This document shows, piece by piece, positions 28,624-61,739 of a DNA stretch of 64,000 bases. Made by a program: the position numbers and the translations under genes. Origin of the DNA: Macrostomum lignano. Its lineage: Eukaryota. Each line of letters opens with the position of its first letter. Position 1 is the stretch's first letter. Location: assembly GCA_002269645.1 (NCBI GenBank), contig NIVC01002693.1, positions 1 to 64,000 of the forward strand. Reading direction: 5' to 3'. The notes below the pieces were generated by a model. It made no database searches and was not told where the DNA came from. It saw only the letters and a list, made by a program, of their open reading frames with translations.

Positions 28624-28684
<61 letters not shown>

Positions 28685-28720
28685 TTCTGTGTGTCTGTCT
28701 GTCTGTCTATCTGTCTGTTG
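28560..28720 (+). repeat. (CTGT)n microsatellite inside predicted 5'-UTR intron 28536-28758
   Basis: CCG|GTGAGT donor and TTCTCAG| acceptor flank the tract in both paralogs. Confidence 0.85.
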
Positions 28721-28884
28721 TACCCAACTATCATTTCAAACCCCTCTTGCATTCTCAGACGCATCTCAATCTCAAGCTTAGCCCAGCAGCTCAGCTCCGT
28801 CAGCACCTCGGCAGCGATCGGGTGACTCAGCCGCCCTTGAGCAGCCGAAGGCAGATCTGCGGCACGCAGGACTCGGGCAGCTCC

Positions 28885-31800
28885 ATGGCTGAGGTGAGCA
28901 CTGAGCAGCCGTCTTTCTATTGTGTTTGCTGTACTGTAGAAATCGTAAAATTGTATTTATCTTCATGAATTATCAAACTCAGTAGATCTGGCTCAGATTT
29001 GACCTTCAATATCACCGCTATTCTCCAGTTTTTCTCGCCTCCCTGTCTTCCGTCATCTTTTCTTCCTCCTCCACAAATATTGGACAGGCTGCTGCAGCCT
29101 GAGAGCCTGAGAATAGCGGGTCTCACAACCGCGCACTGGCAAAGGCGCTCACCATGAACTCGCTGCTCCGTTTTGAACGCAGTGCAAAATTTACTGAATT
29201 TTATTGCGCACTTTGACAGCGCTGCAGACGCAGTTTGCACTGCGCTGTTGCGTCACTCAAAGTTTGTTTGCTCGATTATTGCGCCAGACTTTGACAAAAC
29301 TTTCACAGCCGCGCCTGAGCCAGTGCGAGCTTGATGAAGCTGCTCTGCCGAATCCATAATCGATCCATAAAATGTGCACTGTGCTCTTCTAATACCTCAT
29401 GGCTATAGTTGTAGTTTTTTACTTGCAGTTTCACGCAAACTAAGCCCAATTTCATATTTAAAATTGTGCTTTGTGCTATTGTGCTAATTAGAACTGTGCT
29501 TCATGGTAATCTCGTAAATCTGAAGGCACTCCTTCAGATTATCTAATTAGGCAGTTTTGTCTTGGGATTTGCACTTATTTGGGTCCACTTATTTGGGAAT
29601 ATATGGTCTGAATCCTTGGCTGGGAATCATGCCGCAGTTTCTGTTTTTTGTGTTATGTGCGATGTACTCAACAGCTCTCGCAAAGTTGACAATGACGAGC
29701 ATCTCAGTGGCGCTTTGAGACGTCACGGAGTCGCAGCATTTCAGACCTGCATGATCTAAAAGGGCGATCACGTGACGTCACATCGCATTTCAGGCTCATT
29801 GGTTGTTGACTTAATGTGTAACGTCTTTACTCGATTACAATTTATTATTGTTAAGCTGGTTTTCTGTTCATGAATCCACTATCTCATTGAATGACAATAA
29901 ATATATTTATTGCGTTTATTCAAAATGACTGAATGATTCGGGATCAGAAGTTACTTTGTATATTTAAGTGTTCAAGCTTTCCCGAAGTGCCGGTTTTTGC
30001 AATGGGACATTCATTCCTCTACTAGTGCAAAGAAATTTAAAAGGTTGTGGGACTCTTGTGGCCTTCAGCATCAAGGATGTCAGGTGAACATGAAAGTCAA
30101 TATTTCACAAAGTTCGTCGAGAGACCCAGAGACTCCCACTCGTGAAAGGTGAAAGTCGAACTCAAAATCGAAATGCTTGCTGACTTAACATCTCAAAGTG
30201 TCTGAGGTTGAGCTGGGTGGTACAAGGTCTTTGACATATTTGTTAAGTAGAGCTGAGGAAGCAAAGTAAAAGCGCAATAACCAAAGAAAAGGGGCACCAT
30301 TGATGAGCATCACTCGGTAGCGCCTCATCTCTAGCTGAGAACAAGACGAGCCCGTCGGCGCAGCCAATGGAACAAAGCCGCCACTTCAGTCGGTATCGAC
30401 CTACGACAAATGCCGAACAAAGAAAGGTCTCAAAAATCCTTCATCATTGGCAGGAAAGTCGGTCCTCAGCACCCAGGCAGCAACCCTGACAGATACAGAC
30501 GCAAGCAGACTCGAACTCAATCACCCTGGAGCAACCGAGAGGATACGTCAAATGAGTTCCACATATCGTCTACTCTTGACACAACAACATTACTCGCCAT
30601 TGCCATGATAGCGGAAACCAGATGCTCTGGCACGCTCTAGCAGCAGTTATTCGGCACCTCCACGATTCCGCCTAGCGCAGTGCAGTTATGGGCGGCAGTA
30701 GCGCTGCGGCAGCCTCTTTGTCACTGAGTCAAGAACTAGGGGTCAATGATCGAACAGCAAGCAGACTTCACTATCAGCATCGGTGCTCCGCACTGCAATC
30801 GCGCATTCTGCCATGCACTTTTACTGCCCGTCGGCTTGCGAATTCGGTTGTTACTCTGGTGAATTCGAAACATTCACATTTGACAGGAGTACAGCAATCA
30901 CATTCCTGCACACTTAATAATATCGCTTTAACGAGTCAGTTCGGCGTTGCAATGGAGTTCCTTGTTAATGACCTAACAAGGAGTAATGGCAGGCAGCAAC
31001 ACAACCTTCATTATCTACCCGAGCAAATGTCAAATTCTCCAGCTAGATGCGTTTTGGTTGACGAATGCCCTCAACAAAACAGCACAGACAAGTCCGCAGC
31101 AATGCTCATCGACATGATAGCGGAAAACAGCTGCTCTGCAACCTTTCAGTCACATAGCACGGCACTGAAGACCGAACAAAGCCGAAACGTTTCTATTTTG
31201 CCCTCTGTAATTTACTAATATATCCCCGAGCTTCACTGCCAATTTTATACGCTACAACATACCCTCTAAATATAACAATCTACCCCATCCGCATTTCAGA
31301 GAGCTCTGAGTCCCAGCGAGCCCAGCGAATATGAGGCCTCCCAGACTCTCTACAGGCAGATCAAGCAGGCGGTAGCAGCCGGAGACGAACGGCTCACTGA
31401 TGATCTGCTGTTCCAGGTGTCCGAGAACATCGTCGGACCTGGAGAAGACTTCGCCAAAGGCGTCATTTTTGCTGCAGCTCGGGACAGAGACGGACTGCCG
31501 GTTCTTCGATTACTGGAGATGGGGCACGGGGTCGACATATTTCGGCTGATTGACAGCGATGGCGACTCGGTGACTCACCTGGCAGCGAAGAGTCAGACTG
31601 CGGAGACAATGGAGTTCTTGAAACATCTGCTGCAGGCAGCAGAAGTGGACTGGAACCCATTCGAAGCAAGAGATAGCAGGCAGAAAACAGTGATGCATAA
31701 GGCAGCTGAGAATCACACAGATCATGGATCGACATTCAAATGGCTGATCTTCGAACTCGAGGCAGACTGTCTCACTGACAAAGATGCAGACAATAACACA

Positions 31801-33435
31801 GTCATCCACATTGCGGCTGAGTTCCAGAAGGCGGAATCAATGCAGTTCATCAAAGAGAAGATGAATGGAGTCGAGTGTTTCAAGTTTAGAGGATTCAACA
31901 ACAGGACTGCAGTGCACTGTGCTGCCTGCAATGCTGTGAGCAGCTCAGCACTCGAGTGGCTGGTGAACGAGCTTGGACCAGACTGTCTCACTGACAGAGA
32001 TGCAATCAATGAAACAGCCATCCACCTTGCGGCTGAGGTCCAGAAGGCGGAATCAATGCAGTTCATCAAAGAGAAGATGAATGGAGTCGAGTGTTTCATG
32101 CTGAGAGGAATGCAAAACATGACTGCAGAGCACTGTGCTGCTTGCAATGCTGTGAGCAGCTCAGCACTCGAGTGGCTGGTGAACGAGCTCGAACCAGACT
32201 GTCTCACTGACAGAGATGCTAACAATAACACAGTCATCCACATTGCGGCCATATTCCAGAAGACGGAATCAATGCAGTTCATCAAAGAGAAGATTAATGG
32301 AGTCGAGTGTTTCAAGTTTAGAGGATTCAACAACAGGACTGCAGTGCACTGTGCTGCTTGCAATAAAATGAGCAGCTCAGCACTCGAGTGGCTGGTGAAC
32401 GAGCTCGGACCGGACTGTCTCACTGACAGAGATCAATTTAATGACACAGTCATCCACCTTGCGGCTGAGTTCCAGAAGGCGGAATCAATGCAGTTCATCA
32501 AAGAGAAGATGAATGGAGTCGAGTGTTTCAAGCTGAGAGGAAGTTGCAACACGACTGCAGTGCACTGGGCTGCTTGCAACAAAGTGAGCAGCTCAGCACT
32601 CGAGTGGCTGGTGAACGAGCTCGGACGAGGTTGTCTCACTGAGAGAAATGCAATCAATGAAACATCCATCCACCTTGCGGCTGAGGTCCAGAAGGCAGAA
32701 TCAATGCAGTTCATCAAACAGAAGATGAATGGAGTCGAGTGTTTCAAGCTCAGAGGATGGAACAAAAACACTGCAGTGCACTGTGCTGCTGGAAATACTG
32801 TGAGCAGCTCAGCACTCGAGTGGCTGGTGAACGAGCTCGGACCAGACTGTCTCATTGATAAAGATGCAGATAACTTGACGGTCATCCACATTGCGGCCGT
32901 ATTACAGAAGACGGAATCAATGCAGTTCATCAAAGAAAAGATGAATGGAGTCGAGTGTTTTAAGCTGAGAGATTGTGGCAACATGACTGCAGTGCACCGT
33001 GCTGCTGGAAATACTGTGAGCAGCTCAGCACTCGAGTGGCTGGTGAACGAGCTTGGACCAGACTGTCTCACTGACAGAGATGCAGGCAATGACACAGTCA
33101 TCCACATTGCGGCTGAGTTCCAGAAGACGGAATCAATGCAGTTCATCAAAGAGAAGATGAATGGAGTCGAGTGTTTCAAGCTGAGAGGATGGAAGAACAT
33201 GACTGCAGTGCACTGTGCTGCTTTCAATGCTGTGAGCAGCTCAGCACTCGAGTGGCTGGTGAACGAGCTCGGACCAGACTGTCTTACTGACAGAGATAGC
33301 TCACGTCGGTCAGTTTTATCAATCTGCGAACAATTTCAGTGCAAGCATGTTTTTGATCGACTGTCAAGTTGTGTTCGTACAAGGCGTGCTGTCTCTTTTG
33401 GGGCAATAGCCAACATTTTTAAGTTAAGAAGGTAA
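28885..33435 (+). CDS. Ankyrin-repeat protein, paralog 1: ATGGCTGAG micro-exon (28885-28893) spliced to exon 31300-33435; 7 x 72-aa units (31777-33288)
   Basis: TxxHxAA ankyrin motifs with 216-bp period. Donor GAG|GTGAG and acceptor TTTCAG| are in phase 0 and conserved in paralog 2. Confidence 0.85.
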
Positions 33436-36690: not shown

Positions 36691-37078
36691 TAAAGTTAGC
36701 TACATTTAATACGACCAAAACATACATTTGTGCATCACCTCATTTTCACTGCACACGCTTATTTCACCTTTAACATTTGAGTGAAAACATAACGGAAATG
36801 CACAATGGACTTCTTTAAATCAATCATGACCTGCACAGCAGGCCATACGGGCAGTTGCTTTAGTGATTGGGAGATGGTTTTTGATGCCATAGACATTGTT
36901 CAATCTCTGGATTTTTGGGCCGTTTCGATATGGCCTGCAGTGCAGGCCTTTGGCTTCCAAATGGTTAAAAGTCTGGCCAATAAACCTCGGGCAGAGCACA
37001 TGCATATTGGAGCCGCTTGATCCGTTTGTATGAATATTTCTGAAGTACAACAACAACAACAAAATACGTTGTCAATCA

Positions 37079-45900: not shown

Positions 45901-48900
45901 CTGATCCCCAATCCTGATCCCCAATCCTGATCCCCAATCCTGATCCCCAATCCTGATCCCCAATCCTGATCCCCAATCCTGATCCCCAATCCTGATCCCC
46001 AATCCTGATCCCCAATCCTGATACCCAATCCTAATCCCCAATCCAGATCCCCAATCCTGATTTTCTATCCTGATAGTCTATCCTGATAGTCTATCCTGAT
46101 AGTCTATCCTGATAGTCTATCCTGATAGTCTATCCTGATCCCCAATCCTGATCTTCAATCCTGATCCCCAATCCTGATCCCCAATCCTGATCCCCAATCC
46201 TGATCCCTAATCCTGATCCCCAATCCTGATCCCCAATCCTGATCCCCAATCCTGATACCCAATCCTAATCCCCAATCCAGATCCCCAATCCTGATAGTCT
46301 ATCCTGATAACCAATCCTAATCCCCAATCCAGATCCCCAATCCTGATAGTCTATCCTGATAGTCTATCCTGATCCCCAATCCTGATCCCCAATCCTGATC
46401 TTCAATCCTGATCCCCAATCCTGATCCCCAATCCTGATCCCCAATCCTGATCCCCAATCCTGATCCCCAATCCTGATCCCCAATCCTGATCTTCAATCCT
46501 GATCCCCAATCCTGATCCCCAATCCTGATCCCCAATCCTGATCCCCAATCCTGATCCCCAATCCTGATCCCCAATCCTGATCCCCAATCCTGATCTTTAA
46601 TCCTGATCCCCAATCCTGATCCCCAATCCTGATCCCCAATCCTGATCCCTAATCCTGATCCCCAATCCTGATCCCCAATCCTGATCCCCAATCCTGATCC
46701 CCAATCCTGATCCCCAATCCTGATCCCCAATCCTGATCCCCAATCCTGATACCCAATCCTAATCCCCAATCCAGATCCCCAATCCTGATTGTCTATCCTG
46801 ATAGTCTATCCTGATAGTCTATCCTGATAGTCTATCCTGATAGTCTATCCTGATCCCCAATCCTTATCTTCAATCCTGATCCCCAATCCTGATCCCCAAT
46901 CCTAATCCCCAATCCAGATCCCCAATCCTGATAGTCTATCCTGATAGTCCATCCTGATCCTCAATCCTGATCCCCAATCCTGATTGTCTATCCTGATAGT
47001 CAATCCTGATAGTCTATCCTGATAGTCTATCCTGATAGTCTATCCTGATCCCCAATCCTTATCTTCAATCCTGATCCCCAATCCTGATCCCCAATCCTAA
47101 TCCCCAATCCAGATCCCCAATCCTGATAGTCTATCCTAATAGTCCATCCTGATCCTCAATCCTGATCCCCAATCCTGATCCCCAATCCTGATCCCCAATT
47201 CTGATCCCCAATCCTGATACCCAATCCTAATCCCCAATCCAGATCCCCAATCCTGATAGTCTATCCTGATAGACTATTCTGATAGTCTATCCTGATAGTC
47301 TATCCTGATAGTCTATCCTGATAGTCTATCCTGATAGTCTATCCTGATAGTCTATCCTGATCCCCAATCCAGATCTTCAATCCTGATCCCCAATCCTGAT
47401 CCCCAATCCTGATCCCCAATCCTGATCCCCAGTCCTGATCCCCAATTCTGATCCCCAATTCTGATCCCCAATCCTGATCCCCAATTCTGATCCCCAATCC
47501 TGATCCCCAATCCTGATCCCCAATCCTGATCCCCAATCCTGATCCCCAATCCTGATCCCCAATCATGATCCCCACTCCTGATCCCCAATCCTGATCCCCA
47601 ATCCTGATCCCCAATCCTGATCCCCAATCCTGATACCCAATCCTAATCCCCAATCCAGATCCCCAATCCTGATTGTCTATCCTGATAGTCTATCCTGATA
47701 GTCTATCCTGATAGTCTATCCTGATAGTCTATCCTGATAGTCTATCCTGATAGTCTATCCTGATAGTCTATCCTGATCCCCAATCCTGATCTTCAATCCT
47801 GATCCCCAATCCTGATCCCCAATCCTGATCCCCAATCCTGATCCCCAGTCCTGATCCCCAATTCTGATCCCCAATCCTGATCCCCAATCCTGATCCCTAA
47901 TCCTGATCCCCAATCCTGATCCCCAATCCTGATCCCCAATCCGGATCCCCAATCCTGATCCCCAATCCTGATCCCCAATCCTGATCCCCAATCCTGATCC
48001 CCAATCCTGATCCCCAATCCTGATCCCCAATCCTGATCCCCAATCCTGATCCCCAATCCTGATCCCCAATCCTGATACCCAATCCTAATCCCCAATCCAG
48101 ATCCCCAATCCTGATTTTCTATCCTGATAGTCTATCCTGATAGTCTATCCTGATAGTCTATCCTGATAGTCTATCCTGATAGTCTATCCTGATCCCCAAT
48201 CCTGATCTTCAATCCTGATCCCCAATCCTGATCCCCAATCCTGATCCCCAATCCTGATCCCCAATCCTGATCCCCAATCCTGATCCCCAATCCTGATCCC
48301 CAATCCTGATCCCCAATCCTGATCCCCAATCCTGATCCCCAATCCTGATCCCCAATCCTGATCCCCAATCCTGATCCCCAATCCTGATCCCCAATCCTGA
48401 TTCCCAATCCTGATCCCCAATCCTGATCCCCAATCCTGATAGTCTATCCTGATCCCCAATCCTGATCCCCAATCCTGATCCCCAATCCTGATCCCCAATC
48501 CTGATACCCAATCCTGATCCCCAATCCAGATCCCCAATCCAGATACCCAATCCTGATAGTCTATCCTGATAGTCTATCCTGATCCCCAATCCTGATCCCC
48601 AATCCTGATCCCCAATCCTGATCCCCAATCTTGATCCCCAATCCTAATCCCAAATCCAGATCCCCAATCCTGATAGTCTATCCTGATCCCCAATCCTGAT
48701 CCCCAATCCTGATCCCCAATCCTGATCCCCAATCCTGATCCCCAATCCTGATCCCCAATCCTGATCCCCAATCCTGATCCCCAATCCTGATCCCCAATCC
48801 TGATCCCCAATCCTGATCCCCAATCCTGATCCCCAATCCTGATCCCCAATCCTGATCCCCAATCCTGATCTTTAATCCTGATCCCCAATCCTGATCCCCA

Positions 48901-49990
48901 ATCCTGATCCCCAATCCTGATCCCCAATCCTGATCCCCAATCCTGATTCCCAATCCTGATACCCAATCCTAATCCCCAATCCAGATCCCCAATCCTGATA
49001 GTCTATCCTGATAGTCTATCCTGATCCCCAATCCTGATCCCCAATCCTGATACCCAATCCTAATCCCCAATCCAGATCCCCAATCCTGATAGTCTATCCC
49101 GATAGTCTATCCGGATAGTCTATCCCGATAGTCTATCCGGATAGTCTATCCTGATCCCCAATCCTGATCTTCAATCCTGATCCCCAATCCTGATCCCCAA
49201 TCCTGATCCCCAATCCTGATCCCCAATCCTGATCCCCAATCCTGATCCCCAATCCTGATCCCCAATTCTGATCCCCAATCCTGATCGCCAATCCTGATCC
49301 CCAATCCTAATCCCCAATCCTGATCCCCAATCCTGATCCCCAATCCTGATCCCCAATCCTGATCCCCAATCCTGATCCCCAATCCTGATCCCCAATTCTG
49401 ATCCCCAATCCTGATCCCCAATCCTGATCCCCAATCCTGATCCCCAATCCTGATCCCCAATCCTGATTCCCAATCCTGATCCCCAATCCTGATCCCCAAT
49501 CCTGATCCCCAATCCTGATCCCCAATCCTGATCCCCAATCCTGATCCCCAATCCTGATACCCAATCCTAATCCCCAATCCAGATACCCAATCCTGATAGT
49601 CTATCCTGATAGTCTATCCTGATCCCCAATCCTGATCCCCAATCCTGATCCCCAATCCTGATCCCCAATCCTGATCCCCAATCCTGATCCCCAATCCTGA
49701 TCCCCAATCCTGATCCCCAATCCTGATCCCCAATCCTGATCCCCAATCCTGATCCCAATCCTGATCCCCAATCCTGATCCCCAATCCTGATCCCCAATCC
49801 TGATCCCCAATCCTGATCCTCAATCCTGATCCCCAATCCTGATCCCCAATCCTGATCCCCAATCCTGATCCCCAATCCTGATCCCCAATCCTGATCCTCA
49901 ATCCTGATCCCCAATCCTGATCCCCAATCCTGATCCTTAATCCTGATCCCCAATCCAGATCCCCAATCCTGATCCCTAATTCTGATTCCT
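42960..49990 (+). repeat. 13-bp minisatellite (GATCCCCAATCCT with interspersed GATAGTCTATCCT runs), ~540 units
   Basis: Direct reading; a short degenerate version is at 27629-27770. Confidence 0.98.
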
Positions 49991-50809
49991 GATTCTGACC
50001 GTAGGGACTATTCATTACTTTTTTACTTTAGCGAGTCATTACATGAAAATGTACTGTAAGGACCTTAGTTGTGATCTAACAGACAACCTGCATTCCCGAC
50101 CTGCAGCCCCTTGCCCCTTATCTAACGCACCCACCATTAGACAGCCAGCACACTTCTCTAGAGCAAGAATAGCAAGCAGCGTTTTCGACATTTTTTCAAA
50201 TATGAAAACACTCTCTTACCGAAGTCTTACCGAATCGCTTGTACAAAATTTAAACTGTGCAACTGTGCTTTAAAACTGTGCACTGCTGTCATTTCAATTG
50301 ACCATTCAGTTCAATGCCTTTGGGGTCCCCGCCTTCCCCAGCACTCCGTCTCCGAGCTCGATTCCACCTCTGTGAGGTTGGGGTCTGAGCTGCCCAGCAA
50401 CAGCATAGGGGGCTAGAGAGCTGTCTCTATGCTCAAGACCGTATGAGTGCAGTGGCAGCCCTTTACCTGTCCGAGCATCTGAAAACAGTTCAGCTCAATT
50501 CAATACAGTAGCTTCATCAGGCTGGGTGCACAGAGGCGGGCATGGATGCTGAGCTCGCTATTGTTCTCCATCTGCTTGCAGCTCTCTCTGTCTGCCTTCT
50601 TTTCTGCCTTTCTTCGTTTCGAGCTTCTCTTTAAGAGATGCAGAAGGGGCCTCTTGGAGCGTCTCAGCTCGGATCGGCCTCAGGCAGACTCAAGAATTTT
50701 CTTAGACTGCATTGGCTTTTTGGAGCAGAGAAGCTGCATAACTTTACTGTTTTGCTTCTGAATCCCCACAGCACAGTTCACAAAGAGTAACCGGTGAGTG
50801 CCTGTCTGA

Positions 50810-51820
<1,011 letters not shown>

Positions 51821-51953
51821 GTACACCACCGTCATCGTAAGTCCCACCTCCATTCTCAGACGCATCTCAAACTCAACGCAGCACATCAGCTCTGTCAGCA
51901 CCTCGGCAGCGACTCAGCCGCCCTTGAGCAGCCGAAGGCACTCGTGCAGCTCC

Positions 51954-54900
51954 ATGGCTGAGGTGAGTACTAAGCAGCTGGCTGTCTATTGTGTATGCCG
52001 TGCTGTAGAAATTGAATATTTGCATTTATCTACAAGAACTATCAAAATTATTAAGCCATCAAGCTGAAGAGTTTAATCGGGTAGTGATCAGTCACCCGAA
52101 AACTCTCACTTCCAGACCGCAAGCCTGGGAACAAAATTCAGTGATCACTCACGGGTGCGGGCTCCTCTTCTTTGTCGAGCAGGTTCGTAGGGCTCGTAGT
52201 CTTCTATGGAGTCTTCCTCCGGAGTAGTCTTCTTGAATTCTAAAAATCGGCCGAATGTGAGAGCGTTACAATTTAATCCGTCGACGTCGAAGAATTCCTC
52301 GAGTGCAGAAGTCAATTATCAGAGATGCGCCCTAATAACAAAGTCAACTCCATAACAATAACGACGTCCTCCAGAAAGGGCGTCTTCTTCTAGAAATAAC
52401 GGAATCGGAGTCGTGTGCCCCTATCGGTTACTCTAGGGTATCAAAATCAATTAAATCGATAATCCCTAAAGGGTCCGCAGATCCTATTCAATCCCTTAGG
52501 AATAGGGAGGCCTCAAATTCAATTAATTCAGTAATTCAACTGATCAGTAATAGCCGGCAATAAAATCGCTCTCAATAATCAAATAACGAAGACTCGAACA
52601 AAGGCTTACCAAACGCTATTTATTTCCCTCAGAGATGTAGCCTCGCTTAGCTGCTCCAGCAAGCTTAAGATCTTTGGAGCGTAACGTTTAAGTTTAACTT
52701 TGCTGCGAATGTGTGCATTGTTCTACTTACAGTAACATTCAATGAATGAACCTCTACAAAGCAATCAAAACTCATTAGATCTTGCTCAGGTTTGACCTTC
52801 AATATCACCGCAATCATCCAGTCTTGCTCCCCTTACTGCCTGCCGTCATCCCTTCCTCCACGATAATTGGCCAGGCTGCTGTAGCCTGAGAGCCTGAGAA
52901 CAGCAGTCGCTCTCGCAACCGCGCACTGGCGAAGGCGGGCGCCTTTAATTCGCTGCTCCGTTTTGAACGCAGTGCAAAATTTACTGAATTTTATTGCGCA
53001 CTTTTGCCAGCGCTGACGCAGTTTGCACTGCGCTGTTGCGTCACTTAAAGTTTGCTCGCTCGATGATTGCGCCAGACTTTGACAAAACATTCACAGCCGT
53101 GACTGCGCCAGTGCGAGCTTGATGAAGCGGCTCAGCTTATTCCATAATTGATCCATAAAATGTGCGCTTTGCTCTTTTAATACCTCATCTCTACAGTTAT
53201 AAAAGTATCAAAGTTCTGTATTTTGATTTTTACGTAAATTCGGCATAATTGCCATTATTAAATACACGGTTTCTCATAGTGATGAGGTAATCAGAATCCA
53301 TTTTCAGATTAAAAAACTAAGCAGTTTTTTCTTAGGATTTGTACTTATACTTGGGTCCACCATCTGCAATATTACGAAATATAATTTTTGCATCTTTGGC
53401 TGAGAATCACCGCAGTTTCTGCTTTTTGTGTTATGCGCGATGTACTCAACAGCTGCCGCGAAGTTGACAATGACAAGAACTTCAGTGGCGCTTTGAGACG
53501 TCTCGGAGTCGCAGCATTTCAGACCTGCATGATCCGCAAGGGCGATCACATGACATCATATGTCAACCATTCGGCTGTTGCCTGAGCGACTTGCAAGAAG
53601 TGTTGAGAAGTTCAGCATGTCACACCAGCGTATGAACGCGCTAAGACTGGATGCGTTTAGTCATTGTTGACTCACCTGTGTTCTTGGTAACTTGGTTACG
53701 ACTTAGCTCGTAATATCATTAAGCTGTTTCTCTGTACATTATGCACCCACTACCCCATTGACTGGTAATAAGTATATTTTATTGCGTTTATCCAAAATAA
53801 ATAAATGATTGTCGATATAAAGTACAATTATTGCGTTGCTTATTTATTCAAGCTTTCCTGAAGTCCTGTTCTTGCAACGCGACTTTCCTTCCTGCACTCG
53901 AGCGACAGATATTTAAATGGTTATGGGACTCTGATGGCATCCAGCATCAAGGATGTCAGGTCAGCATGAAAGCCAATATTTCATCAAGTCGCACTGCTTG
54001 CTGATTTAACATCTCGAAGTGTCTGAGGCTGAGCTGGGTGGCAGAAAGTCTTTCACTTATTATTATTAAGTAGTTATATTATTAATTATTAATTATTATT
54101 AATTATTAATTATTAAGTAGAAGCTGTGGAAGCAAAGTACAAGCGCAATAACCAAAGGAATGAGGCACCATTGGCGAGCATCATTCGTTAGCGCCTCATC
54201 ACTAGTTGAGAACAGTTGTTGTTGTTGTTGTTGAGAATAGCAGGGTGAGACCGTCGACGCAGCCGAAGACACCGTGTCAGTTCTGCGATGCGATAGAGTT
54301 CCATGTTAATGACCTGCTTGTCTAGAAAGTAGAAATTCTTCACCTATCTTGCAGGCAGCAACACTGACTTCATTAGCTATCCGAGCAAGTTTGTCAAATT
54401 CGAGGTCTTGGCGATTTCATCCTTCAAATATTTCTACTTTCTGTTTTGCAATACAGACTCGTACTTATCAGTTAGCTGGCTCCCTTCGTCTACCACGCTT
54501 TTCCCACAGACTAGCATAACCGTTAATTTGCCACAGACATTTCAGCTACCCTGTTCGCTATGTTAGTATAAATACAAGTTCAACTCGCGGCCTCGGCCCT
54601 TCACCTCTGCTTCTCTTCTACTGATTCCTTCCCCGCTAACCGCTCGTTCAATGTAGTTTATTGTCAACTTCCACAAGTTGGTAGCAGAGCGTGGTTCCTT
54701 TCTCTTCCTCGAGTAATCGATTCGACAAATTGGTAGCAGAGCGTCCGGATTACCATGGTTATCACGATATCAACAACTGACCTATCTGGCGACCAGATCA
54801 AGCAGTCCAAGAACGACCACAGCACAGCCTCTGCTGAAGCGCCAATCGACGCGGAGCAGCCGCACGTCGAAGCCAGTGACCCGCCGCCTGCTGCTTCAGC

Positions 54901-57900
54901 AGCCAGCAGCCGCGACATCTGCTCTTCCCGCTTCTCCTTCCACGACTGCAATCCCTGAAGCAGCTCCAGCTGCCTCCGTTGATATCAACGCCCTCCTGAC
55001 CGCTATGACCGCGATGATGCAGCAGAATCAGCTGCTCATACAACAGCTCGCCGCTAATGCCCATCCTGCCCTGACATCTGCGTCATCGTCCGCAACCAGC
55101 GATAGCGATCCGGCCGCTCTCATCCACTCCACTGTTCTCCAGAAGGTTCGTCTCCCGACATTCGACGGCACCGACCCCACCGCATTCCCAGGGTTCTGGA
55201 ACGCCTTCCTCTACCGCGTCGACCAATCCAATCTCAACGACGTCGATAAGTTTGAGGCGCTCCGCGGTCTTCACTCTGGCCCGGCACTCCGGAAGCTTGG
55301 CGCCCTCGACGCTTGCCAGCCCAACGCCTACGCCGAAGCCTGCCGCGTCCTCCAGGCCAACTACGCCGATGCCCAGGAGCAGAAAAACGCCTTCTTCCAG
55401 CTCCTTTTCGCTCTTCACTGCAGCTCCGCCTCCGACTTGGACGAGCTCGAGAATTACACCGACGCCCTCCAACTCGCTACCGGCCAGCTACTCCGCCTAG
55501 GTGAGCTCGCGTGCACCCTCGACAGCCGCGTCTACGCACTCTGGAACCGCCTCCCGCTCGAGCTCCAGACCGAAATCCGGAACAACCGCGCCGCCAACGG
55601 GCTGCCCCTCGTGCCCACCATGGCCCAGCTCCAGGGCCTCTTTACTGATTACTTGCATGTTGTATCACATTTACAATGCGTATTCTCTCGGCTCTTCCAG
55701 CTCCAATATCATCGACGCCAACATCCTCCGGTTCGTCTTCGATGTCAAGCTGGATCGGCACAACCAGTGAAACTCCTCTGTTGATCGCAATGTTGTGCAG
55801 CACAAAACAGGCGCTTATTATCAAGCAAAACTTGCTCGGATGGAATCGGAGACTTGCGGAATGACGATTCAGGCATTAAAATCGAGACTTTAGAATCCCG
55901 AATGAACATTCTATTTTCACCTGAGTTTGTCGCAGCCTCCGGTTGAAGTCGGTCTCTCTTGCATCTCTTGGAGTGTCGAAAACCTTCATGAGAAATGGTC
56001 TCAGAGGATATCCACTATCTCCGACGAGGAATCTTGCCACTAACCCTTCTGATAGAATCTCCTTTAATGCAGAGTTGTTGAACATGAAAGAATCGTGTGT
56101 ACTTCTCGGCCAGAGTACTAGAATGTTCGTGAATGACATTGCGACACTGCACACAGCTTGAACAATAATAGAAGAAAACGATTTTCTGTTCTCAAAAACA
56201 TACTCATTGTTAGTTGGACTCTTTATAGCGACATTTGTGCAGTCGATAACACCTATGACATGTGGCAGTTCGGCGATCAAATGGAACCCGGCCATGGTCT
56301 GATTGATTTCAACGTGGCTCCTAGGAAAACTAACAAAATTGTTCGTAGCGACTGTCAAATAGTCTATGTTCCGATTTCGGCACAGCCGTTGGCAACAAGG
56401 GTGAGGCCAAGCACCACTCGTCACGTAGAGGTTAAAGGACAGCAGGGCGATATCATCGGCCTAGACAAACACACCGTCTGTCTCTCGCGCATTCTGCTAG
56501 TTTCTGCACACACCCCGCCGAAGCAGAGTAGATGTCGTTGATAGGAAGTGTAGATAGCGGCACCACCAAGTTGAGCAACGGACAAACAGAAATGGTGCTT
56601 TCTCATATATCGCGCTTTACCTACAAAGATCATAGATCAAAAAGTCGGAGAGGCTGCAAGGTGATGACACGGCAGCCCATCAACATGATAGCGGAAAACA
56701 ACTACTCTGCCACTTTGCAGTCACATAGCACGACACTCACGATCAAACCGAGCGGAAATGTTTCCGCTCTGCCCTTCACAATTTACCTATATGTCCTTAA
56801 GTTTCACTGCCAATATCATAGGCCTTTAATTAACGTAGACTAATTATAACTATTGAATATCTGCCTAATCCGATTTCAGAGACCTCAGAGTCCCAGCGAG
56901 TCCAGCGAATACGAGGCCTCCCAGAGTCTCTACAGTCAGATCAAGCAGGCGGTAGCAGCCGGAGACGAACGGCTCACTGATGATCTGCTGTTCCAGGTGT
57001 CCGAGAACATCGTCGGACCTGGAGAAGACTTCGCCAAAGGCGTCATATTTGCTGCAGCTCGGGACAGAGACGGACTGCCGGTTCTTCGATTACTGGAGAT
57101 GGGGCACGGGGTCGACATATTTCGGCTGGTTGATAGCGATGGCGACTCGGTGACTCACCTGGCAGCAAAGAGTCAGACTGCGGAGACGATGGAGTTCCTG
57201 AAACAGCTGCTGCAGTCAATAGAAGTGGACTGGAACCCATTCGAAGCAAGAGATAGCAGGCAGAAAACAGTGATGCATAGGGCAGCTGAGAATCTCACAG
57301 ATCATGGATCGACATTCCAATGGCTGATCTTCGAACTCGAAGCGGACTGTCTCACTGACAGAGATGCAGACAATGACACAGTCATCCACACTGCGGCTCA
57401 GTTCCAGATGGCGGAATCAATGCAGTTCATCAAAGAGAAGATGAATGGAGTCGAGTGTTTCAAGCTGAGAGGATGGAACAACAGGACTGCAGTGCACTGT
57501 GCTGCTTTCAATGAAGTGAGCAGCTCAGCACTCGAGTGGCTGGTGAACGAGCTCGGACCAGACTGTCTCACTGACAGAGATGCAAAAAATAGCACAGTCA
57601 TCCACATTGCGGCTGAGTTCCAGAAGGCGGAATCAATGCAGTTCATCAAACAGAAGATGAATGGAGTCGAATGTTTCAAGCTGAGAGGAAGGCGAAACAA
57701 GACTGCAGTGCACTGTGCTGCTTTCAATGCTGTGAGCAGCTCAGCACTCGAGTGGCTGGTGAACGAGCTCGGACCAGACTGTCTCACGGACAGAGATGCA
57801 GACAATAGCACAGTCATCCACATTGCGGCTGAGTTTCAGAAGGCGGAATCAATGCAGTTCATCAAACAGAAGATGAATGGAGTCGAGTGTTTCAAGCTGA

Positions 57901-59825
57901 GAGGATGGAACAACAGGACTGCAGTGCACTGTGCTGCTTGCAATGATGTGAGCAGCTCAGCACTCGAGTGGCTGGTGAACGAGCTCGGACCAGACTGTCT
58001 CACTGACAGAAATGCAAACAATAGCACAGTCATCCACATTGCGGCTAAGTTCCAGAAGGCGGAATCAATGCAGTTCATCAAAGAGAAGATGAATGGAGTC
58101 GAGTGTTTCAAGCTGAGAGGAGTGAACAACATAACTGCAGTGCACTGTGCTGCTTTCAATGCTGTGAGCAGCTCAGCACTCGAGTGGCTGGTGAACGAGC
58201 TCGGACCAGACTGTCTCACTGACAGAGATGCAAACAATAACACAGTCATCCACATTGCGGCTGACTTTCAGAAGGCGGAATCAATGCAGTTCATCAAAGA
58301 GAAGATGAGTGGAGTCGAGTGTTTCAAGCTGAGAGAAAGGCAAAACATGACTGCAATACACTGTGCTGCTTTCAATGCTGTGAGCAGCTCAGCACTCGAG
58401 TGGCTGGTGAACGAGCTCGGACCAGACTGTCTCACTGACAGAGATGCAAACAATAGCACAGTCATCCACATTGCGGCTAAGTTCCAGAAGGCGGAATCAA
58501 TGCAGTTCATCAAAGAGAAGATGAATGGAGTCGAGTGTTTCAAGCTGAGAGGAGTGAACAACATGACTGCAGTGCACTGTGCTGCTTTCAATGCTGTGAG
58601 CAGCTCAGCACTCGAGTGGCTGGTGAACGAGCTCGGACCAGACTGTCTCACTGACAGAGATGCAAACAATAACACAGTCATCCACATTGCGGCTGAGTTC
58701 CAGAAGGCGGAATCAATGCAGTTCATCAAAGAGAAGATGAATGGAGTCGAGTGTTTCAAGCTGAGAGGAATTCTAAACATGACAGCAGTGCACTGTGCTG
58801 CTTGCAATAAAGTGAGCAGCTCAGCACTCGAGTGGCTGGTGAACGAGCTCGGACCAGACTGTCTCACGGACAGAGATGCAGACAATAGCACAGTCATCCA
58901 CATTGCGGCTGAGTTTCAGAAGGCGGAATCAATGCAGTTCATCAAAGAGAAGATGAATGGAGTCGAGTGTTTCAAGCTGAGAGGAGTGAACAACATAACT
59001 GCAGTGCACTGTGCTGCTTTCAATGCTGTGAGCAGCTCAGCACTCGAGTGGCTGGTGAACGAGCTCGGACCAGACTGTCTCACGGACAGAGATGCAAACA
59101 ATAACACAGTCATCCACATTGCGGCTCAGTTCCAGAAGGCGGAATCAATGCAGTTCATCAAAGAGAAGATGAGTGGAGTCGAGTGTTTCAAGCTGAGAGA
59201 AAGGCAAAACATGACTGCAATACACTGTGCTGCTTTCAATGCTGTGAGCAGCTCAGCACTCGAGTGGCTGGTGAACGAGCTCGGACCAGACTGTCTCACT
59301 GACAGAGATGCAAACAATAGCACAGTCATCCACATTGCGGCTAAGTTCCAGAAGGCGGAATCAATGCAGTTCATCAAAGAGAAGATGAATGGAGTCGAGT
59401 GTTTCAAGCTGAGAGGAGTGAACAACATGACTGCAGTGCACTGTGCTGCTTTCAATGCTGTGAGCAGCTCAGCACTCGAGTGGCTGGTGAACGAGCTCGG
59501 ACCAGACTGTCTCACTGACAGAGATGCAAACAATAGCACAGTCATCCACATTGCGGCTGAGTTCCAGAAGGCGGAATCAATGCAGTTCATCAAAGAGAAG
59601 ATGAATGGAGTCGAGTGTTTCAAGCTGAGAGGAATTCTAAACATGACAGCAGTGCACTGTGCTGCTTGCAATAAAGTGAGCAGCTCAGCACTCGAGTGGC
59701 TGGTGAACGAGCTCGGACCAGACTGTCTCACTGATACTGATTGTTCACGTCGGTCTGCTTTATCAATCTGCAAACTACGTCAGAGCAGGCAAATTTTCGA
59801 TCGACTGTCAAGATTAGTTCGCTAA
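51954..59825 (+). CDS. Ankyrin-repeat protein, paralog 2: ATGGCTGAG micro-exon (51954-51962) spliced to exon 56880-59825; 11 x 72-aa units (57357-59732)
   Basis: 990-aa open frame, 216-bp period, splice sites conserved with paralog 1. Confidence 0.87.
54442..54674 (+). mobile_element. Putative 5' LTR of a BEL/Pao element (TG...CA, TATAAATA at ~54567)
   Basis: Ends in CCACA just upstream of a PBS; absent from paralog 1. 5' boundary is tentative. Confidence 0.55.
54679..54696 (+). promoter_or_regulatory. Primer-binding site complementary to initiator tRNA-Met 3' end; partial second copy at 54731-54744
   Basis: TGGTAGCAGAGCGTGGTT. Confidence 0.85.
54755..55650 (+). pseudogene. gag: Truncated BEL/Pao gag (DUF1759-like)
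   Basis: [11 protein letters not shown]...FWNAF...[10 protein letters not shown]...Y.EA..VL..NY. Confidence 0.85.
55645..56420 (-). pseudogene. PIF/Harbinger (DDE_Tnp_4, HARBI1-like) transposase C-terminal fragment
   Basis: [27 protein letters not shown]...[14 protein letters not shown](stop)...ACFVLHN. Confidence 0.9.
56425..56620 (-). pseudogene. Small degenerate non-LTR RT fragment
   Basis: Manual translation: APFLFV and (stop)ADDIALLS, resembling the RTE ORF at 37-38 kb. Confidence 0.45.
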
Positions 59826-61739
59826 AACTGCTTTTTGCGCACTTACAACTGTTTTTATGTTAATAGTGCATATTTTAGGCTATTGGCAAGGCAACGCGCG
59901 TTTTTTTGTTGGTGGTGTTTTTTAATTCCATGGTTACGCTCACATACCGAAGAATATGCACGGATTGGTCTATTTACTTTTCCCGTAATTAGCCCACTTT
60001 TTCGACGGATGATGATAACTTATAAGCAGTCCCAATAGATTCGTTGACATTCTTGGATTCAACAATGAGGTACAAGTAAGAGAACTTCAACAGGTATTAT
60101 CCGGTTGAACCGCCAAGCGAATTCAGCTGGTATAATTTATTGCTGAGCATGGCTTCTCATCAATAGAGGTAGCTCGTAGAAAGCGAACGTCAGCAAGGTC
60201 TGTGCGAGTGCTGGCTGACGTTTCTGTGTATTTCTGTGGTTGACACTGCAAAATGCTGCTATATAGGACTTTCAAATGCGGATTTTTCGTTGGCACTGGG
60301 AGTCCTATTTGGTTTTTCACCAGAATTTACTACTAAGTAATGGTTGCGGAGTAGATATACGAGAACTAGTACGTGCGGTCGAATTCTATTAGTTTCTCTT
60401 ATACTGATTCAATATGCACGCATATGAGTATTTCTCACCTTTTGCCTTTGCTTCGACTGTTTATTATCTTATAAACTTTTGAAGACTTATTTGATAATAT
60501 CTCAGACGCTGTTGTAGTGTGAAGTAGCACCGAAGCCATGAATTTTTTTAAAGACTTTGTTTCGTTAGACCTCCCAATATTTTATCTGTTTCATAAATGA
60601 TCGCAGTAATAAATTTTGGTAACACAGATTTATTTAATCCGTTTTGTGCGTCGCTAAATGCTAAGTTGTTTATTTTTCGTTGACTGATTGCTGTCTGTTC
60701 GTAAAACTCATGCTCTTATTTACAGTGGCTTCAGACACTGGGTGTCTGACACTAAGTGCGCGCAACTCACTACTAACATGACCCACCTAGGCATGTCAAT
60801 TAAGACGCGTTTAGACTGCCATGAAAAGTGAAAAGTGCCACCAAACCATGAGACTTATGCACGGACAGAGAAACAAGAAAATATTTAAAAGACGTGGAAT
60901 CTGCACTCAAAAGCGATGTTAATCTAGTGGCAGTGTGAACGAATCTTTTGACTAAAATATTAAACCTCCGTTTGTTTTACCCAGGCTTACGCATGCTTAT
61001 TCAGATTTTTGTGTCTATTTATTAATCAATTTTATGCCCACATTTGTTTTACTCTGTGTAGCGAACTCTTATTTGCACGCCTTGATGGTGCCACGATCCC
61101 GAACTCTCATCGCACCCCAGCCAATCGCGGCTGCACTCGTGTGATGACGTCACTGGTTGCTTAAGCAGCGGAATTCAAGGTCTGTTCAGCGGTCACGTGA
61201 TGCATGCTCTTGGATAAGCTTCCCCACCCTCCAATCCCAGTCTTGCTTGCCCGCCTTTCGAGGCGTCAATGGGAATCTGCAATGCAGCTTCATCGCTACC
61301 ATGCACTTGCACTTGCCCTTTCCGACCATTTCCAGTAGGCTGACCTCCCCGATTCCTTTTACTGGCCAAAATTGTCGCCAGCTTCGGCTGGGCCAGCGGC
61401 ACCGACTGCTCCGTGAACTGCGACCGACCGGACCCGCTGCTGCCAGCGACCTCACGGCCTCCCTTAGTGTCAGCGACTGCCTGTTTTTGCTCTTGTAGAC
61501 TGGTATGCTCAGATGTGAGCTGGTTTGCTGATCCATTTTTATTTCCTGATCGATTTTTACCTACAATGAATTAAAGTACATATCGTACAAAACTCAACGC
61601 TATCAACGATTTGGCGATGACTTTGGAACTGAAAATTATTTCAGCCTATTTTTGTTTTATTTAAGTTGATTGACACGTCAGAATGGCAGCTGCAAAAGTA
61701 GGAGCAGAAGGAGCGGACTGCATGGACTCATACTGGAGT

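What the first reader, a model, noticed from the sequence alone, without database searches (positions are those of the whole stretch)
56880..59825. Second hypervariable ankyrin gene with a different specificity string on the same scaffold
Seen: 11 units share the scaffold of paralog 1 but have a largely different set of variable motifs (repeat B: GWNNR, GRRNK, GWNNR, GVNNI, ERQNM, GVNNM, GILNM; repeat A: AA-Q/E/K/D-F). The ORF is intact despite heavy TE load in its intron. Repeats stay homogeneous across paralogs while flanks have clearly diverged. Inference: an ordered, TALE-like code of variable residues, maintained by inter-unit conversion and selection.
Basis: partly seen in the sequence, partly recalled or inferred. 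Interest (0 to 1): 0.75.

Follow-up and report, generated by a model that had tools for sequence, protein, structure and literature searches.

The report
Hypervariable ankyrin-repeat gene in a flatworm
This is an intact Macrostomum lignano (flatworm) gene for a long ankyrin-repeat protein: eleven nearly identical 72-residue units differ almost only at eight residues placed where ankyrin repeats usually touch their ligands, a pattern well known in fungal immune receptors and in man-made binders (DARPins) but not found described for flatworms in my literature searches.

Summary
Window 56880-59825 is exon 2 of a two-exon M. lignano gene. Exon 1 supplies ATG-GCT-GAG at 51954-51962. The 4.9-kb intron carries transposon-derived inserts. 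Exon 2 encodes an N-terminal cap, 11 x 216-bp units (two ankyrin repeats each) and a C-terminal cap. Units 8-11 are a 98.8% copy of units 4-7, so only seven units are distinct.

Variation sits in eight codons per unit (columns 9, 11, 19, 44, 45, 47, 55, 57). Within the gene, dN at these codons is 0.56, against scaffold dS of 0.037. These columns fall in the finger loops and at the ends of the inner helices of a confident ankyrin-solenoid model. The same columns vary in paralog 1 and in three other M. lignano arrays.

Silent divergence between the two paralogs is about 0.08 in exon 2, against about 0.2-0.33 in the intron and flanks. Linked patches of change and chimeric units show exchange between units.

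The best reading is a cytosolic binding protein with a fast-diversifying recognition groove. It belongs to a family that among the best database matches is almost entirely M. lignano, and some members carry kinase or caspase domains. The "TALE-like code" is only an analogy. The closest known case is the highly conserved ankyrin repeats of fungal NLRs. The ligand and biological role are unknown.

The parts
51822..51962 (+). Gene 2 exon 1: 5' UTR plus start codon and two codons (ATG GCT GAG = MAE at 51954-51962)
   Evidence: tblastn of the M. lignano model P0165 N-terminus matches 51822-51962 exactly over '[34 protein letters not shown]'. The sequence reads ...tccATGGCTGAG|gtgagt. The true 5' end of the exon was not determined.
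51963..56879 (+). Gene 2 intron 1 (4917 bp), GTGAGT donor ... tttcAG acceptor
   Evidence: Colinear blocks with the 2406-bp intron of paralog 1 are 77-87% identical. The 200 bp before the acceptor have K=0.33.
54402..56674 (.). Transposon-derived insert in the intron, absent from paralog 1: gag-like DUF1759 ORF 54876-55784 (+) and Harbinger-type DDE_Tnp_4 ORF 55876-56424 (-)
   Evidence: Gap in g1/g2 colinearity (67 bp in g1 against 2.27 kb in g2). Pfam DUF1759 E=5e-8, DDE_Tnp_4 E=9e-22. The same gag-like ORF lies upstream of a sister paralog in the chimeric M. lignano model P0159.
56880..57344 (+). Exon 2, N-terminal cap (155 aa, degenerate ankyrin repeats; no signal peptide)
   Evidence: It is 95.5% identical to paralog 1 (dS 0.079, dN 0.037). 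Helical repeat model, pLDDT about 90.
57345..57992 (+). Units 1-3 (216 bp each; two ankyrin repeats per unit)
57993..58856 (+). Units 4-7: first copy of the four-unit block
58857..59720 (+). Units 8-11: second copy of the four-unit block, 98.8% identical to units 4-7. Unit 8 is a unit-3/unit-4 chimera.
   Evidence: Of 10 differences, 5 are in hypervariable codons (binomial p=0.0026).
59721..59825 (+). C-terminal cap (34 aa) and TAA stop; strongly diverged from paralog 1 (p=0.22, different stop position)
   Evidence: It resembles the C-terminus of the single-exon M. lignano homologue P0001 in length and position.
28885..28893 (+). Paralog 1 exon-1 coding part (ATG GCT GAG) followed by a GTGAGC donor
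31300..33435 (+). Paralog 1 exon 2: N-cap, 7 units (31765-33276), C-cap and stop

Best explanation
Gene 2 is an intact two-exon Macrostomum lignano gene. It encodes a 984-aa protein with no hydrophobic N-terminal segment that would suggest a signal peptide, so it is probably cytosolic. The protein consists entirely of ankyrin repeats: N-cap, 11 double-repeat units, C-cap, about 25 repeats in all. They form an elongated solenoid.

In each 72-aa unit, eight residues carry almost all the variation: three in repeat A and five in repeat B. They lie in the finger loops and at the C-terminal end of, or just after, the inner helix. These are the usual ligand-contact positions of ankyrin repeats, so they are inferred to line the concave groove. 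The framework is kept nearly identical, even at silent sites. The protein is therefore a natural 'consensus scaffold plus randomised paratope' binder.

Shown:
- the repeat anatomy;
- the gene structure;
- the ankyrin fold;
- the concentration of nonsynonymous change in these codons, far above the silent rate;
- recurrence of the same variable columns in four other arrays;
- a recent four-unit block duplication;
- chimeric units and patchwise exchange between units;
- lower silent divergence in exon 2 than in the intron and flanks.

Inferred:
- The array evolves by unequal crossing-over and short-tract conversion, which homogenise the scaffold and reshuffle variable patches.
- Diversifying selection acts on a ligand-binding surface.
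- The protein recognises fast-changing protein ligands.
- Related M. lignano proteins attach the same kind of array to a STE-group kinase or a caspase domain. The ankyrin-only genes in this window would then act as adaptors, decoys or regulators of such a recognition and signalling family, perhaps in defence, non-self recognition or genetic conflict.

The ligand and the biological role are unknown.
For: Anatomy.

Gene structure and species: P0165 is 100% identical, and the MAE|RPQSPSE junction is present in several M. lignano models. Exon 1 and the donor were found in the window, and the same arrangement holds in paralog 1.

Fold: Pfam Ank_2 E=4e-63. AlphaFold with a 15-sequence alignment gives pLDDT 92.8 and pTM 0.88. 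Foldseek top matches are Espin-1 ANK (TM 0.61-0.67), ankyrin-B/R, NOMPC, MIB1 and DARPins. The repeat register against ankyrin-1/2 puts TVIH/TAVH on TPLH.

Position of the HV columns: in the model's secondary structure, columns 9 and 11 lie in the beta-turn, column 19 at the end of helix 1, columns 44/45/47 in the loop before helix 1, and columns 55/57 just after helix 1.

Rates: within gene 2, HV dN 0.56 against scaffold dS 0.037 and scaffold dN 0.016. Within paralog 1, 0.82 against 0.133. Units differ from the consensus at 0-5 of 192 scaffold nt but at 4-9 of 24 HV nt. Permutation p<5e-5.

Independent replication: the M. lignano ANK-kinase P0005 array varies at 7 of the same 8 columns (hypergeometric p=4e-6). 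With the HV set fixed in advance, dN is 0.375 against rest dS 0.028. P0159 and P0018 also have their top-entropy columns at 9, 11, 19, 43-45 and 55.

Exchange between units: and the P0166 recombinant.

Family: among the best-matching protein clusters whose source was checked, those at about 35% identity or more are M. lignano apart from one bacterial MAG protein (P0024); two mussel and environmental hits at 25-28% rank among them, and other weaker hits are from other organisms. Architectures are ANK-only, ANK+Pkinase (nearest solved structures MST3/4 and ASK1) and ANK+Peptidase_C14.

The same evolutionary regime is documented for fungal NLR ANK repeats (PMC4986451).
Against: - No expression, ligand or phenotype data were available. 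The functional role is pure inference from architecture and evolutionary pattern.
- Scaffold dN/dS is only moderately below 1 (0.34-0.45), and N-cap dN/dS is about 0.47, so constraint is not strong.
- Because the array is young (dS 0.037), an open reading frame is partly inherited by recent amplification rather than proven by long-term selection.
- Part of the HV diversity may be imported in patches from other paralogs rather than created in place. Linked silent markers travel with HV changes, which inflates apparent dN relative to local dS.
- The unit comparisons are not phylogenetically independent, and no formal site-model test (PAML or FUBAR) was run.
- No model coordinates were available, so placement on the concave face rests on the repeat register and secondary structure, not on measured solvent exposure.
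- The ANK-caspase relative P0016 and P0159 come from an old fragmented assembly and may be chimeric gene models.
Confidence: 0.7

Rival explanations
1. TALE-like modular code. Each unit reads one element of a linear ligand, either nucleotides as in TAL effectors or successive residues of an extended peptide. The ordered string of variable residues then spells a target sequence.
For: The formal pattern resembles TALE arrays: near-identical tandem units and few variable residues per unit. Unit order is roughly preserved between paralog 1 and the sister array P0159 while HV residues change. From established knowledge, the 24-repeat ankyrin-B/R groove binds extended peptides through several semi-independent sites. 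Those structures are among the fold matches (4rlv, 5y4d). DARPins selected to bind G-quadruplex DNA are reported (title and abstract of PMC4132713).
Against: No TAL-effector domain or any nucleic-acid-binding domain was found. The fold is ankyrin, not a TALE superhelix. There are eight variable residues per 72-aa unit spread over two repeats, not a two-residue RVD. No clear nuclear localisation signal is visible by eye. No ligand is known, so a one-to-one rule has no support.
Confidence: 0.07
2. Non-adaptive by-product. The array is a very recent amplification of one unit in a repeat-rich genome. Framework residues are held by folding constraints and by homogenising conversion. Surface residues are simply free to drift or are mutational or conversion hot spots. 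The protein has no diversifying recognition function and may be on its way to becoming a pseudogene.
For: The array is young (dS 0.037), with a 98.8% block duplication. Scaffold and N-cap dN/dS are 0.34-0.47, which shows only moderate constraint. The locus is embedded in satellites and transposons. A sister paralog model (P0159) is interrupted by a reverse-transcriptase insertion.
Against: Relaxed constraint cannot push dN above dS, yet HV dN exceeds scaffold dS 6- to 15-fold in three arrays. Homogenising conversion without selection would erase HV differences too. The same columns are variable in arrays that are only about 40-46% identical and carry different effector domains. Both window paralogs keep their start codon, splice sites and reading frame.
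Confidence: 0.13
3. Combinatorial shuffling without new mutation. The variable patches are an old, limited alphabet shared among many paralogs. Short-tract conversion moves them between units and loci, so the apparent high dN reflects old alleles pasted into a young scaffold rather than ongoing positive selection.
For: Differences between duplicated units come as tracts that join silent markers (columns 4 and 20) to HV codons 9 and 19. Unit 8 is a unit-3/unit-4 chimera. Related motifs recur across paralogs: GFNNR in g1 and P0159, xRQNM/xMQNM in all three, GSCNT/GCCNT/ESCNT, and the C..K and F..A helix pairs. Silent divergence in exon 2 is below that of the intron, which suggests conversion between paralogs.
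Against: Most repeat-B loop motifs of gene 2 (GVNNI, GVNNM, GILNM, GRRNK) are not seen in paralog 1 or P0159. Keeping an alphabet at ligand-contact positions against homogenisation still requires selection for diversity. This is therefore a mechanism that feeds the main explanation rather than a true alternative.
Confidence: 0.1

Closest known systems
Highly conserved ('HiC') ankyrin repeats of fungal NOD-like receptors (Dyrka et al. 2014, PMC4986451; Podospora Pa_3_8560 and related; same regime as the HNWD WD40 repeats)
   Same: Tandem ANK repeats at or above 85% identity over more than 100 aa. [quoted passage not shown] Repeat number changes. Concerted evolution occurs within and between loci. 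Family members combine the repeat array with different effector domains (compared).
   Different: This is a metazoan (flatworm); that paper finds such repeats to be rare in metazoa (0.8%). There is no NACHT or NB-ARC domain in the window genes. The evolving unit is a 72-aa double repeat. Relatives place the effector domain (STE-like kinase, caspase) C-terminal to the repeats rather than N-terminal. The window genes are repeat-only.
Designed ankyrin repeat proteins (DARPins)
   Same: A consensus framework carries a small set of variable surface positions per repeat that form the paratope (PMC8683736). By my alignment, the natural HV columns correspond to module positions 3, 5 and 13 (repeat A) and 2, 3, 5, 13 and 15 (repeat B). 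The library positions 2, 3, 5, 13, 14 and 33 of DxxGxTPLHLAAxxGH... are from my own knowledge of Binz et al. 2003 and were not checked here. DARPin structures are among the fold matches.
   Different: DARPins are synthetic, with 2-3 internal repeats of 33 aa. This protein is natural, has about 25 repeats of about 36 aa in an A/B alternation, and has cysteines and other non-consensus framework residues.
TAL effector repeat arrays (Xanthomonas/Ralstonia)
   Same: Near-identical tandem repeats, even at the DNA level. Specificity is presumed to reside in a few hypervariable residues per repeat. Evolution proceeds by repeat gain, loss and recombination.
   Different: The fold and Pfam family differ. 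TALE repeats are 33-35 aa with a 2-residue RVD and read one DNA base per repeat. No evidence of nucleic-acid binding exists here.
Platyhelminth ANK-caspases and the M. lignano kinase-prodomain caspase (PMC11463336)
   Same: These are flatworm proteins that couple an ankyrin region to a caspase. The M. lignano relative P0016 joins a hypervariable 71-aa-unit array to a Peptidase_C14 domain containing QACRG.
   Different: The window genes have no caspase or kinase domain. That paper does not describe repeat homogeneity or hypervariability. It reports ANK-caspases as specific to parasitic flatworms. P0016 may be a chimeric model.
Canonical long ankyrin solenoids (ankyrin-R/B 24 repeats, NOMPC 29 repeats, Espin-1)
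   Same: A long ANK superhelix. These are the best sequence and fold matches. From established knowledge, ligand binding occurs along the inner groove.
   Different: In those proteins the repeats are diverged from one another and conserved between species. Here the repeats are near-identical to one another and the groove residues turn over rapidly.

Membership tests
Ankyrin repeat superfamily (Pfam clan CL0465) | Sequence match to the ANK profiles with the T-x-x-H / A-A core motif | tested here: met
   Ank_2 E=4.3e-63, Ank_4 2.3e-46, Ank 7.3e-29. TVIHIAA and TAVHCAA align on TPLHxAA of ankyrin-1/2.
Ankyrin repeat superfamily (Pfam clan CL0465) | Helix-turn-helix plus beta-hairpin repeats stacked into a solenoid | tested here: met
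   AlphaFold model of N-cap plus 3 units: pLDDT 92.8, pTM 0.88. Foldseek prob 1.00 to Espin-1 AR, AnkB, ankyrin-1, NOMPC and DARPins.
Repeats with high internal conservation (criterion of Dyrka et al. 2014) | At least 85% identity between repeats over at least 100 aa | tested here: met
   Gene 2: mean pairwise unit identity 0.90 (aa) and 93-100% (nt) over 792 aa. Paralog 1 averages only 0.80.
Repeats with high internal conservation (criterion of Dyrka et al. 2014) | Hypervariable positions with an excess of nonsynonymous change, located on the binding face | tested here: met
   HV dN 0.56 against scaffold dS 0.037. Replicated in L002. Positions lie in the finger loops and at the ends of the inner helices. 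A formal codon site model was not run.
Repeats with high internal conservation (criterion of Dyrka et al. 2014) | Repeat-number polymorphism and recombination between repeats | tested here: inconclusive
   Seven against 11 units between paralogs, an 864-bp block duplication, a chimeric unit 8, and the P0166 model with one unit fewer. No population sample was available, so true allelic polymorphism is not shown.
NOD-like receptor / STAND | Central NACHT or NB-ARC nucleotide-binding domain | tested here: not met
   No such Pfam hit in gene 2, in paralog 1 or in the relatives scanned.
TAL effector | 33-35-aa TAL repeats (Pfam TAL_effector) with a repeat-variable diresidue at positions 12-13 | tested here: not met
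   No TAL_effector hit. The unit is 72 aa (two ANK repeats) with 8 variable residues.
TAL effector | One repeat binds one DNA base | not testable with these tools
   Needs binding experiments.
M. lignano ANK-kinase / ANK-caspase proteins | C-terminal protein kinase or caspase domain after the ANK array | tested here: not met
   tblastn with the P0005 kinase region finds nothing in the window (best E=0.38). Gene 2 ends in a C-cap and stop like the ANK-only homologue P0001. The window genes are ANK-only members of the same repeat family.
M. lignano 72-aa double-ANK repeat family | Shared unit architecture (DCLT..T.(V/P).H.AA..Q...SM.F.K...G..CF...G...RTA.H.AA.N...S.L.WLV.ELG) | tested here: met
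   Among the best hits whose source was checked, those at about 35% identity or more are M. lignano apart from one bacterial MAG protein, and they share this unit consensus. P0165 is 100% identical to gene 2.

The most novel reading that the evidence does not exclude
The window genes are part of a previously unrecognised, germline-encoded, rapidly diversifying recognition repertoire of flatworms. Hypervariable ankyrin solenoids serve as sensors. They are either free (as here) or fused to STE-type kinase or caspase effectors. The system would be functionally convergent with fungal NLR highly conserved repeats and plant or animal NLRs, but without a NOD module. It would couple ligand recognition directly to phosphorylation or proteolytic cell-death signalling in defence, allorecognition or intragenomic conflict.
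Probability: 0.22. Interest if true: 0.8.

Novelty: new variant of a known kind. Interest (0 to 1): 0.6.

Why it matters
Repeat arrays that are homogenised yet hypervariable at the ligand face are a hallmark of fast-evolving recognition systems: fungal NLRs, TAL effectors, and by design DARPins. Dyrka et al. (PMC4986451) found them to be rare in animals. My literature searches found no description of them in Macrostomum.

If these genes are real sensors or adaptors, they offer three things. First, a tractable animal model, since M. lignano is reported to be transgenic- and RNAi-amenable. Second, a view of how binding specificities are generated by unequal crossing-over, patch conversion and selection. 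Third, a possible entry into flatworm innate recognition linked to kinase or caspase signalling.

They are also a natural experiment for ankyrin-binder engineering. The positions that nature varies largely coincide with those chosen for DARPin libraries.

On the technical side, the locus illustrates how such genes are fragmented or missed in short-read assemblies and annotations.

Tried and rejected
1. Spliced-leader trans-splicing as the source of the start codon. The M. lignano SL ends in ATG (PMC8629364) and would be in frame at the 56880 acceptor. I dropped this once a cis exon 1 (ATGGCTGAG|GTGAGT) was found in both paralogs and in gene models with the exact MAE|RPQ junction. Alternative trans-splicing is not excluded.

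2. A downstream kinase exon, as in most relatives. No kinase-like sequence exists anywhere in the window.

3. Single-sequence AlphaFold of the full 981-aa protein failed (pLDDT 43). It succeeded only with a family alignment on a 371-aa fragment.

4. Extra Pfam and NCBIfam hits on the repeat protein. These include DUF6189, DUF6837, DHBP_synthase, phage gp12 and precorrin-8X methylmutase. No single stretch passes on its own, and the scores are sums of eleven weak identical matches. I treat them as artefacts.

5. Positional orthology of units between the two window paralogs. The scaffold tree shows no such signal. All gene-2 units form a near-star cluster with paralog-1 unit 7 at its centre (1.6% scaffold difference). 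The other paralog-1 units sit on long branches. Only the xNNR motif at units 1 and 3 of both genes hints at retained order.

6. dS measured inside the HV codons is not usable. There are only about 3.6 silent sites, and multi-hit path averaging distorts the estimate. I used scaffold dS as the neutral yardstick instead.

7. Comparison of the window with two M. lignano loci (L001, L002) by blastn found no shared DNA. Species identity came from the protein matches instead.

8. Literature search for Macrostomum plus ankyrin found no description of this family.

Full report
WHAT IS THERE

The window is eukaryotic and comes from the flatworm Macrostomum lignano. An M. lignano UniRef protein (P0165) is 100% identical to the start of the gene. 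Among the best-matching protein clusters whose source was checked, those at about 35% identity or more are M. lignano apart from one bacterial MAG protein.

The finding's coordinates, 56880-59825, are exactly exon 2 of a two-exon gene.
- The reading frame is open from the acceptor tttcag|AGA (56879/56880) to TAA at 59823-59825. It has no in-frame ATG near its start.
- The start codon lies 4.9 kb upstream, at ...tccATGGCTGAG|gtgagt with ATG at 51954.
- Several M. lignano gene models carry the junction MAE|RPQSPSE.
- Paralog 1 has the same structure: ATG at 28885, donor at 28894, acceptor at 31299/31300, stop at 33435.

Compared with the 2.4-kb intron of paralog 1, the intron of gene 2 has about 2.27 kb extra (about 54402-56674). 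The extra sequence holds a DUF1759 gag-like ORF and, on the other strand, a Harbinger-type DDE ORF. A further ~0.7 kb is also extra.

THE REPEATS

TRF reports a 216-bp period and 11.1 copies. Translation gives 11 units of 72 aa, each made of two ankyrin repeats (A and B). They are preceded by a 155-aa cap of degenerate repeats and followed by a 34-aa cap.

Pfam confirms ankyrin. A family-alignment AlphaFold model of the cap plus three units is confident (pLDDT 92.8). It matches Espin-1, ankyrin-B/R, NOMPC, MIB1 and DARPin structures.

Units 8-11 are a 98.8% copy of units 4-7, an 864-bp block duplication, so the gene has seven distinct units.

WHERE THE VARIATION IS

Across the 18 units of both paralogs, eight columns each carry 1.4-2.8 bits of amino-acid entropy: columns 9, 11, 19, 44, 45, 47, 55 and 57. 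Most other columns are invariant, even in codon choice.
- In gene 2, 18 of 30 variable nucleotides fall in these 24 nucleotides. No permutation out of 20,000 concentrates variation this much.
- Each gene-2 unit differs from the consensus at 0-5 of 192 scaffold nucleotides but at 4-9 of 24 HV nucleotides.

The register against ankyrin-1/2 and the model's secondary structure place the columns as follows:
- columns 9 and 11 in the beta-turn of repeat A;
- column 19 at the end of its inner helix;
- columns 44, 45 and 47 in the finger loop of repeat B;
- columns 55 and 57 just after its inner helix.

These are the canonical ligand-contact positions of ankyrin repeats. From my own knowledge of the DARPin design, they are nearly the positions randomised in those libraries.

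RATES

Nei-Gojobori estimates:

| Comparison | Scaffold dS | Scaffold dN | HV dN |
|---|---|---|---|
| Within gene 2 | 0.037 | 0.016 | 0.56 |
| Within paralog 1 | 0.133 | 0.059 | 0.82 |
| Between paralogs | 0.088 | 0.040 | 0.80 |

The HV codons therefore change 6-15 times faster than silent sites. Relaxed constraint alone cannot produce this.

The pattern replicates independently. P0005 (locus L002) is an M. lignano ANK-kinase only about 40-46% identical to gene 2, and it has a homogenised 71-aa-unit array. Its variable columns overlap 7 of the 8 (hypergeometric p=4e-6). With the HV set fixed in advance from the window, dN is 0.375 against 0.028 for silent sites elsewhere. Two further arrays (P0159, P0018) also show their top-entropy columns at 9, 11, 19, 43-45 and 55.

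HOW THE ARRAY CHANGES

Four observations bear on this.
1. Block duplication of four units.
2. Chimeric units. Unit 8 equals unit 3 over nt 1-90 and unit 4 over nt 61-216. The model P0166 joins repeat A of unit 1 to repeat B of unit 2 and so has one unit fewer.
3. The ten differences between the duplicated blocks are enriched in HV codons (5 of 10, p=0.0026). They come as short tracts that link silent markers (columns 4 and 20) to HV codons 9 and 19. This indicates patch conversion rather than independent point mutations.
4. The scaffold tree has no positional orthology. Gene-2 units form a near-star cluster with paralog-1 unit 7 at its centre, while the other paralog-1 units are on long branches. 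Gene 2's array has therefore been rebuilt recently from one or a few units.

The array of paralog 1 is roughly colinear with that of a third M. lignano paralog (P0159), apart from a one-unit indel, and the HV residues have changed.

PARALOGS AND FLANKS

The two genes lie 25 kb apart in a segmental duplication: 28048-33849 corresponds to 50296-60241.
- Silent divergence is 0.079 in the unique N-cap and 0.088 in the scaffold.
- The intron blocks are 77-87% identical. The 200 bp before the acceptor have K=0.33. The C-cap coding region differs by 22%, and the 3' flank by about 35%.
- The N-cap silent rate is significantly below that of the adjacent intron (Fisher p=4e-5).

Either conversion between paralogs covers exon 2 up to the last unit, or silent sites are constrained. 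The sharp 5' boundary at the splice site is unexplained.

FAMILY CONTEXT

Relatives in M. lignano share the 71-72-aa double-repeat unit. They come in three forms:
- ANK-only (P0001, a single-exon gene with diverged repeats; P0004; P0008);
- ANK plus a C-terminal protein kinase, whose nearest solved structures are MST3/4 and ASK1;
- in one model (P0016), ANK plus a caspase domain.

The window contains no kinase. At least three close paralog types of the window genes exist in M. lignano, each with a different HV string. The literature describes platyhelminth ANK-caspases and an M. lignano kinase-prodomain caspase (PMC11463336). It does not describe hypervariable repeat arrays there.

INTERPRETATION

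The best-supported explanation is a cytosolic ankyrin solenoid whose ligand groove is under diversifying selection. Its scaffold is homogenised, and its variable patches are reshuffled, by unequal crossing-over and short-tract conversion. This is the same regime as the highly conserved ANK repeats of fungal NLRs (PMC4986451). It differs in three ways: it occurs in an animal, it lacks a NOD domain, and the effector-bearing relatives are of another kind.

The 'TALE-like code' is a fair description of the pattern but not of the mechanism. The fold, the number and placement of variable residues, and the absence of any TAL or nucleic-acid-binding domain all argue against it. No one-unit-to-one-element rule can be tested here.

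A recognition role (defence, non-self or conflict; adaptor or decoy for the kinase and caspase paralogs) is inference only.

LIMITS

- No expression, population or ligand data were available.
- The unit comparisons are not independent, and no formal site model was run.
- No model coordinates were available to measure exposure.
- Some relatives come from a fragmented assembly and may be chimeric.

VERDICT

This is a new variant of a known kind of system and of moderate-to-good interest (0.6).

Noticed in passing
window 17411-25873 and 14121-14805: A 167-bp satellite (50.7 copies, 98% matches) has a 4-copy array of the same unit in inverted orientation 2.6 kb upstream. The segment between them (14806-17410) holds a 42-bp tandem repeat (15707-16409) that overlaps a 197-aa ORF (15463-16056).
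   Followed up: no
window 42962-49986 and 27630-27745: A 13-bp satellite AATCCTGATCCCC (about 540 copies, 7 kb, GC skew about -0.6) lies upstream of gene 2. A 116-bp remnant of the same 13-mer sits at the corresponding place upstream of paralog 1. The satellite therefore expanded, or collapsed, after the segmental duplication.
   Followed up: partly
window 50841-51819 and 28565-28718: A (TGTC)n microsatellite of 979 bp lies just upstream of exon 1 of gene 2, against 154 bp in paralog 1. The M. lignano model P0165 reads through sequence on both sides (50638-50787 and 51822-51962) without it. It is therefore either spliced out of the 5' UTR or absent from the other haplotype or assembly.
   Followed up: partly
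window 56880 (5' border) and 59720 (3' border) against 31300/33276: High similarity between the paralogs starts almost exactly at the splice acceptor and ends at the last repeat unit. Silent divergence is about 0.08 inside, against K of about 0.26-0.33 just outside. This could reflect conversion between paralogs, possibly through a spliced cDNA, or constraint on silent sites. It is not resolved.
   Followed up: partly
protein P0016 (M. lignano, UniRef A0A1I8F2E4): The same hypervariable 71-aa-unit array as the ANK-kinase P0005 is joined to a caspase domain (Peptidase_C14 E=1e-24, QACRG motif). This is either effector-domain swapping on a common sensor array or a chimeric gene model from a fragmented assembly.
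   Followed up: partly
protein P0159 (M. lignano, UPI0007A303B3): This chimeric 1760-aa model fuses the same gag-like TE ORF seen in the gene-2 intron to a sister ANK gene. Its ninth unit is interrupted by a reverse-transcriptase sequence. The TE association therefore predates or recurs among paralogs, and at least one copy may be disrupted.
   Followed up: partly
window 1292-8114 (-) and 37030-38367 (+): Two long minus-strand ORFs encode retrotransposon proteins: 1292-4066 has aspartyl protease, reverse transcriptase and RNase H, and 4539-8114 has a zinc knuckle. A separate reverse-transcriptase ORF lies at 37030-38367. The locus is embedded in mobile elements.
   Followed up: no
window 57398-59773 (-): Long antisense ORFs (up to 215 aa) run through the repeat array. 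They repeat with the same 216-bp period and look like a by-product of the repeat unit lacking stops on that frame, not like a gene.
   Followed up: no
window 56853-59825 protein, Pfam/NCBIfam output: Repeat summation makes unrelated families (DUF6189, DUF6837, DHBP_synthase, phage gp12 and others) exceed their whole-protein cut-offs although no single stretch is significant. This is a trap for automatic annotation of homogenised repeat proteins.
   Followed up: yes
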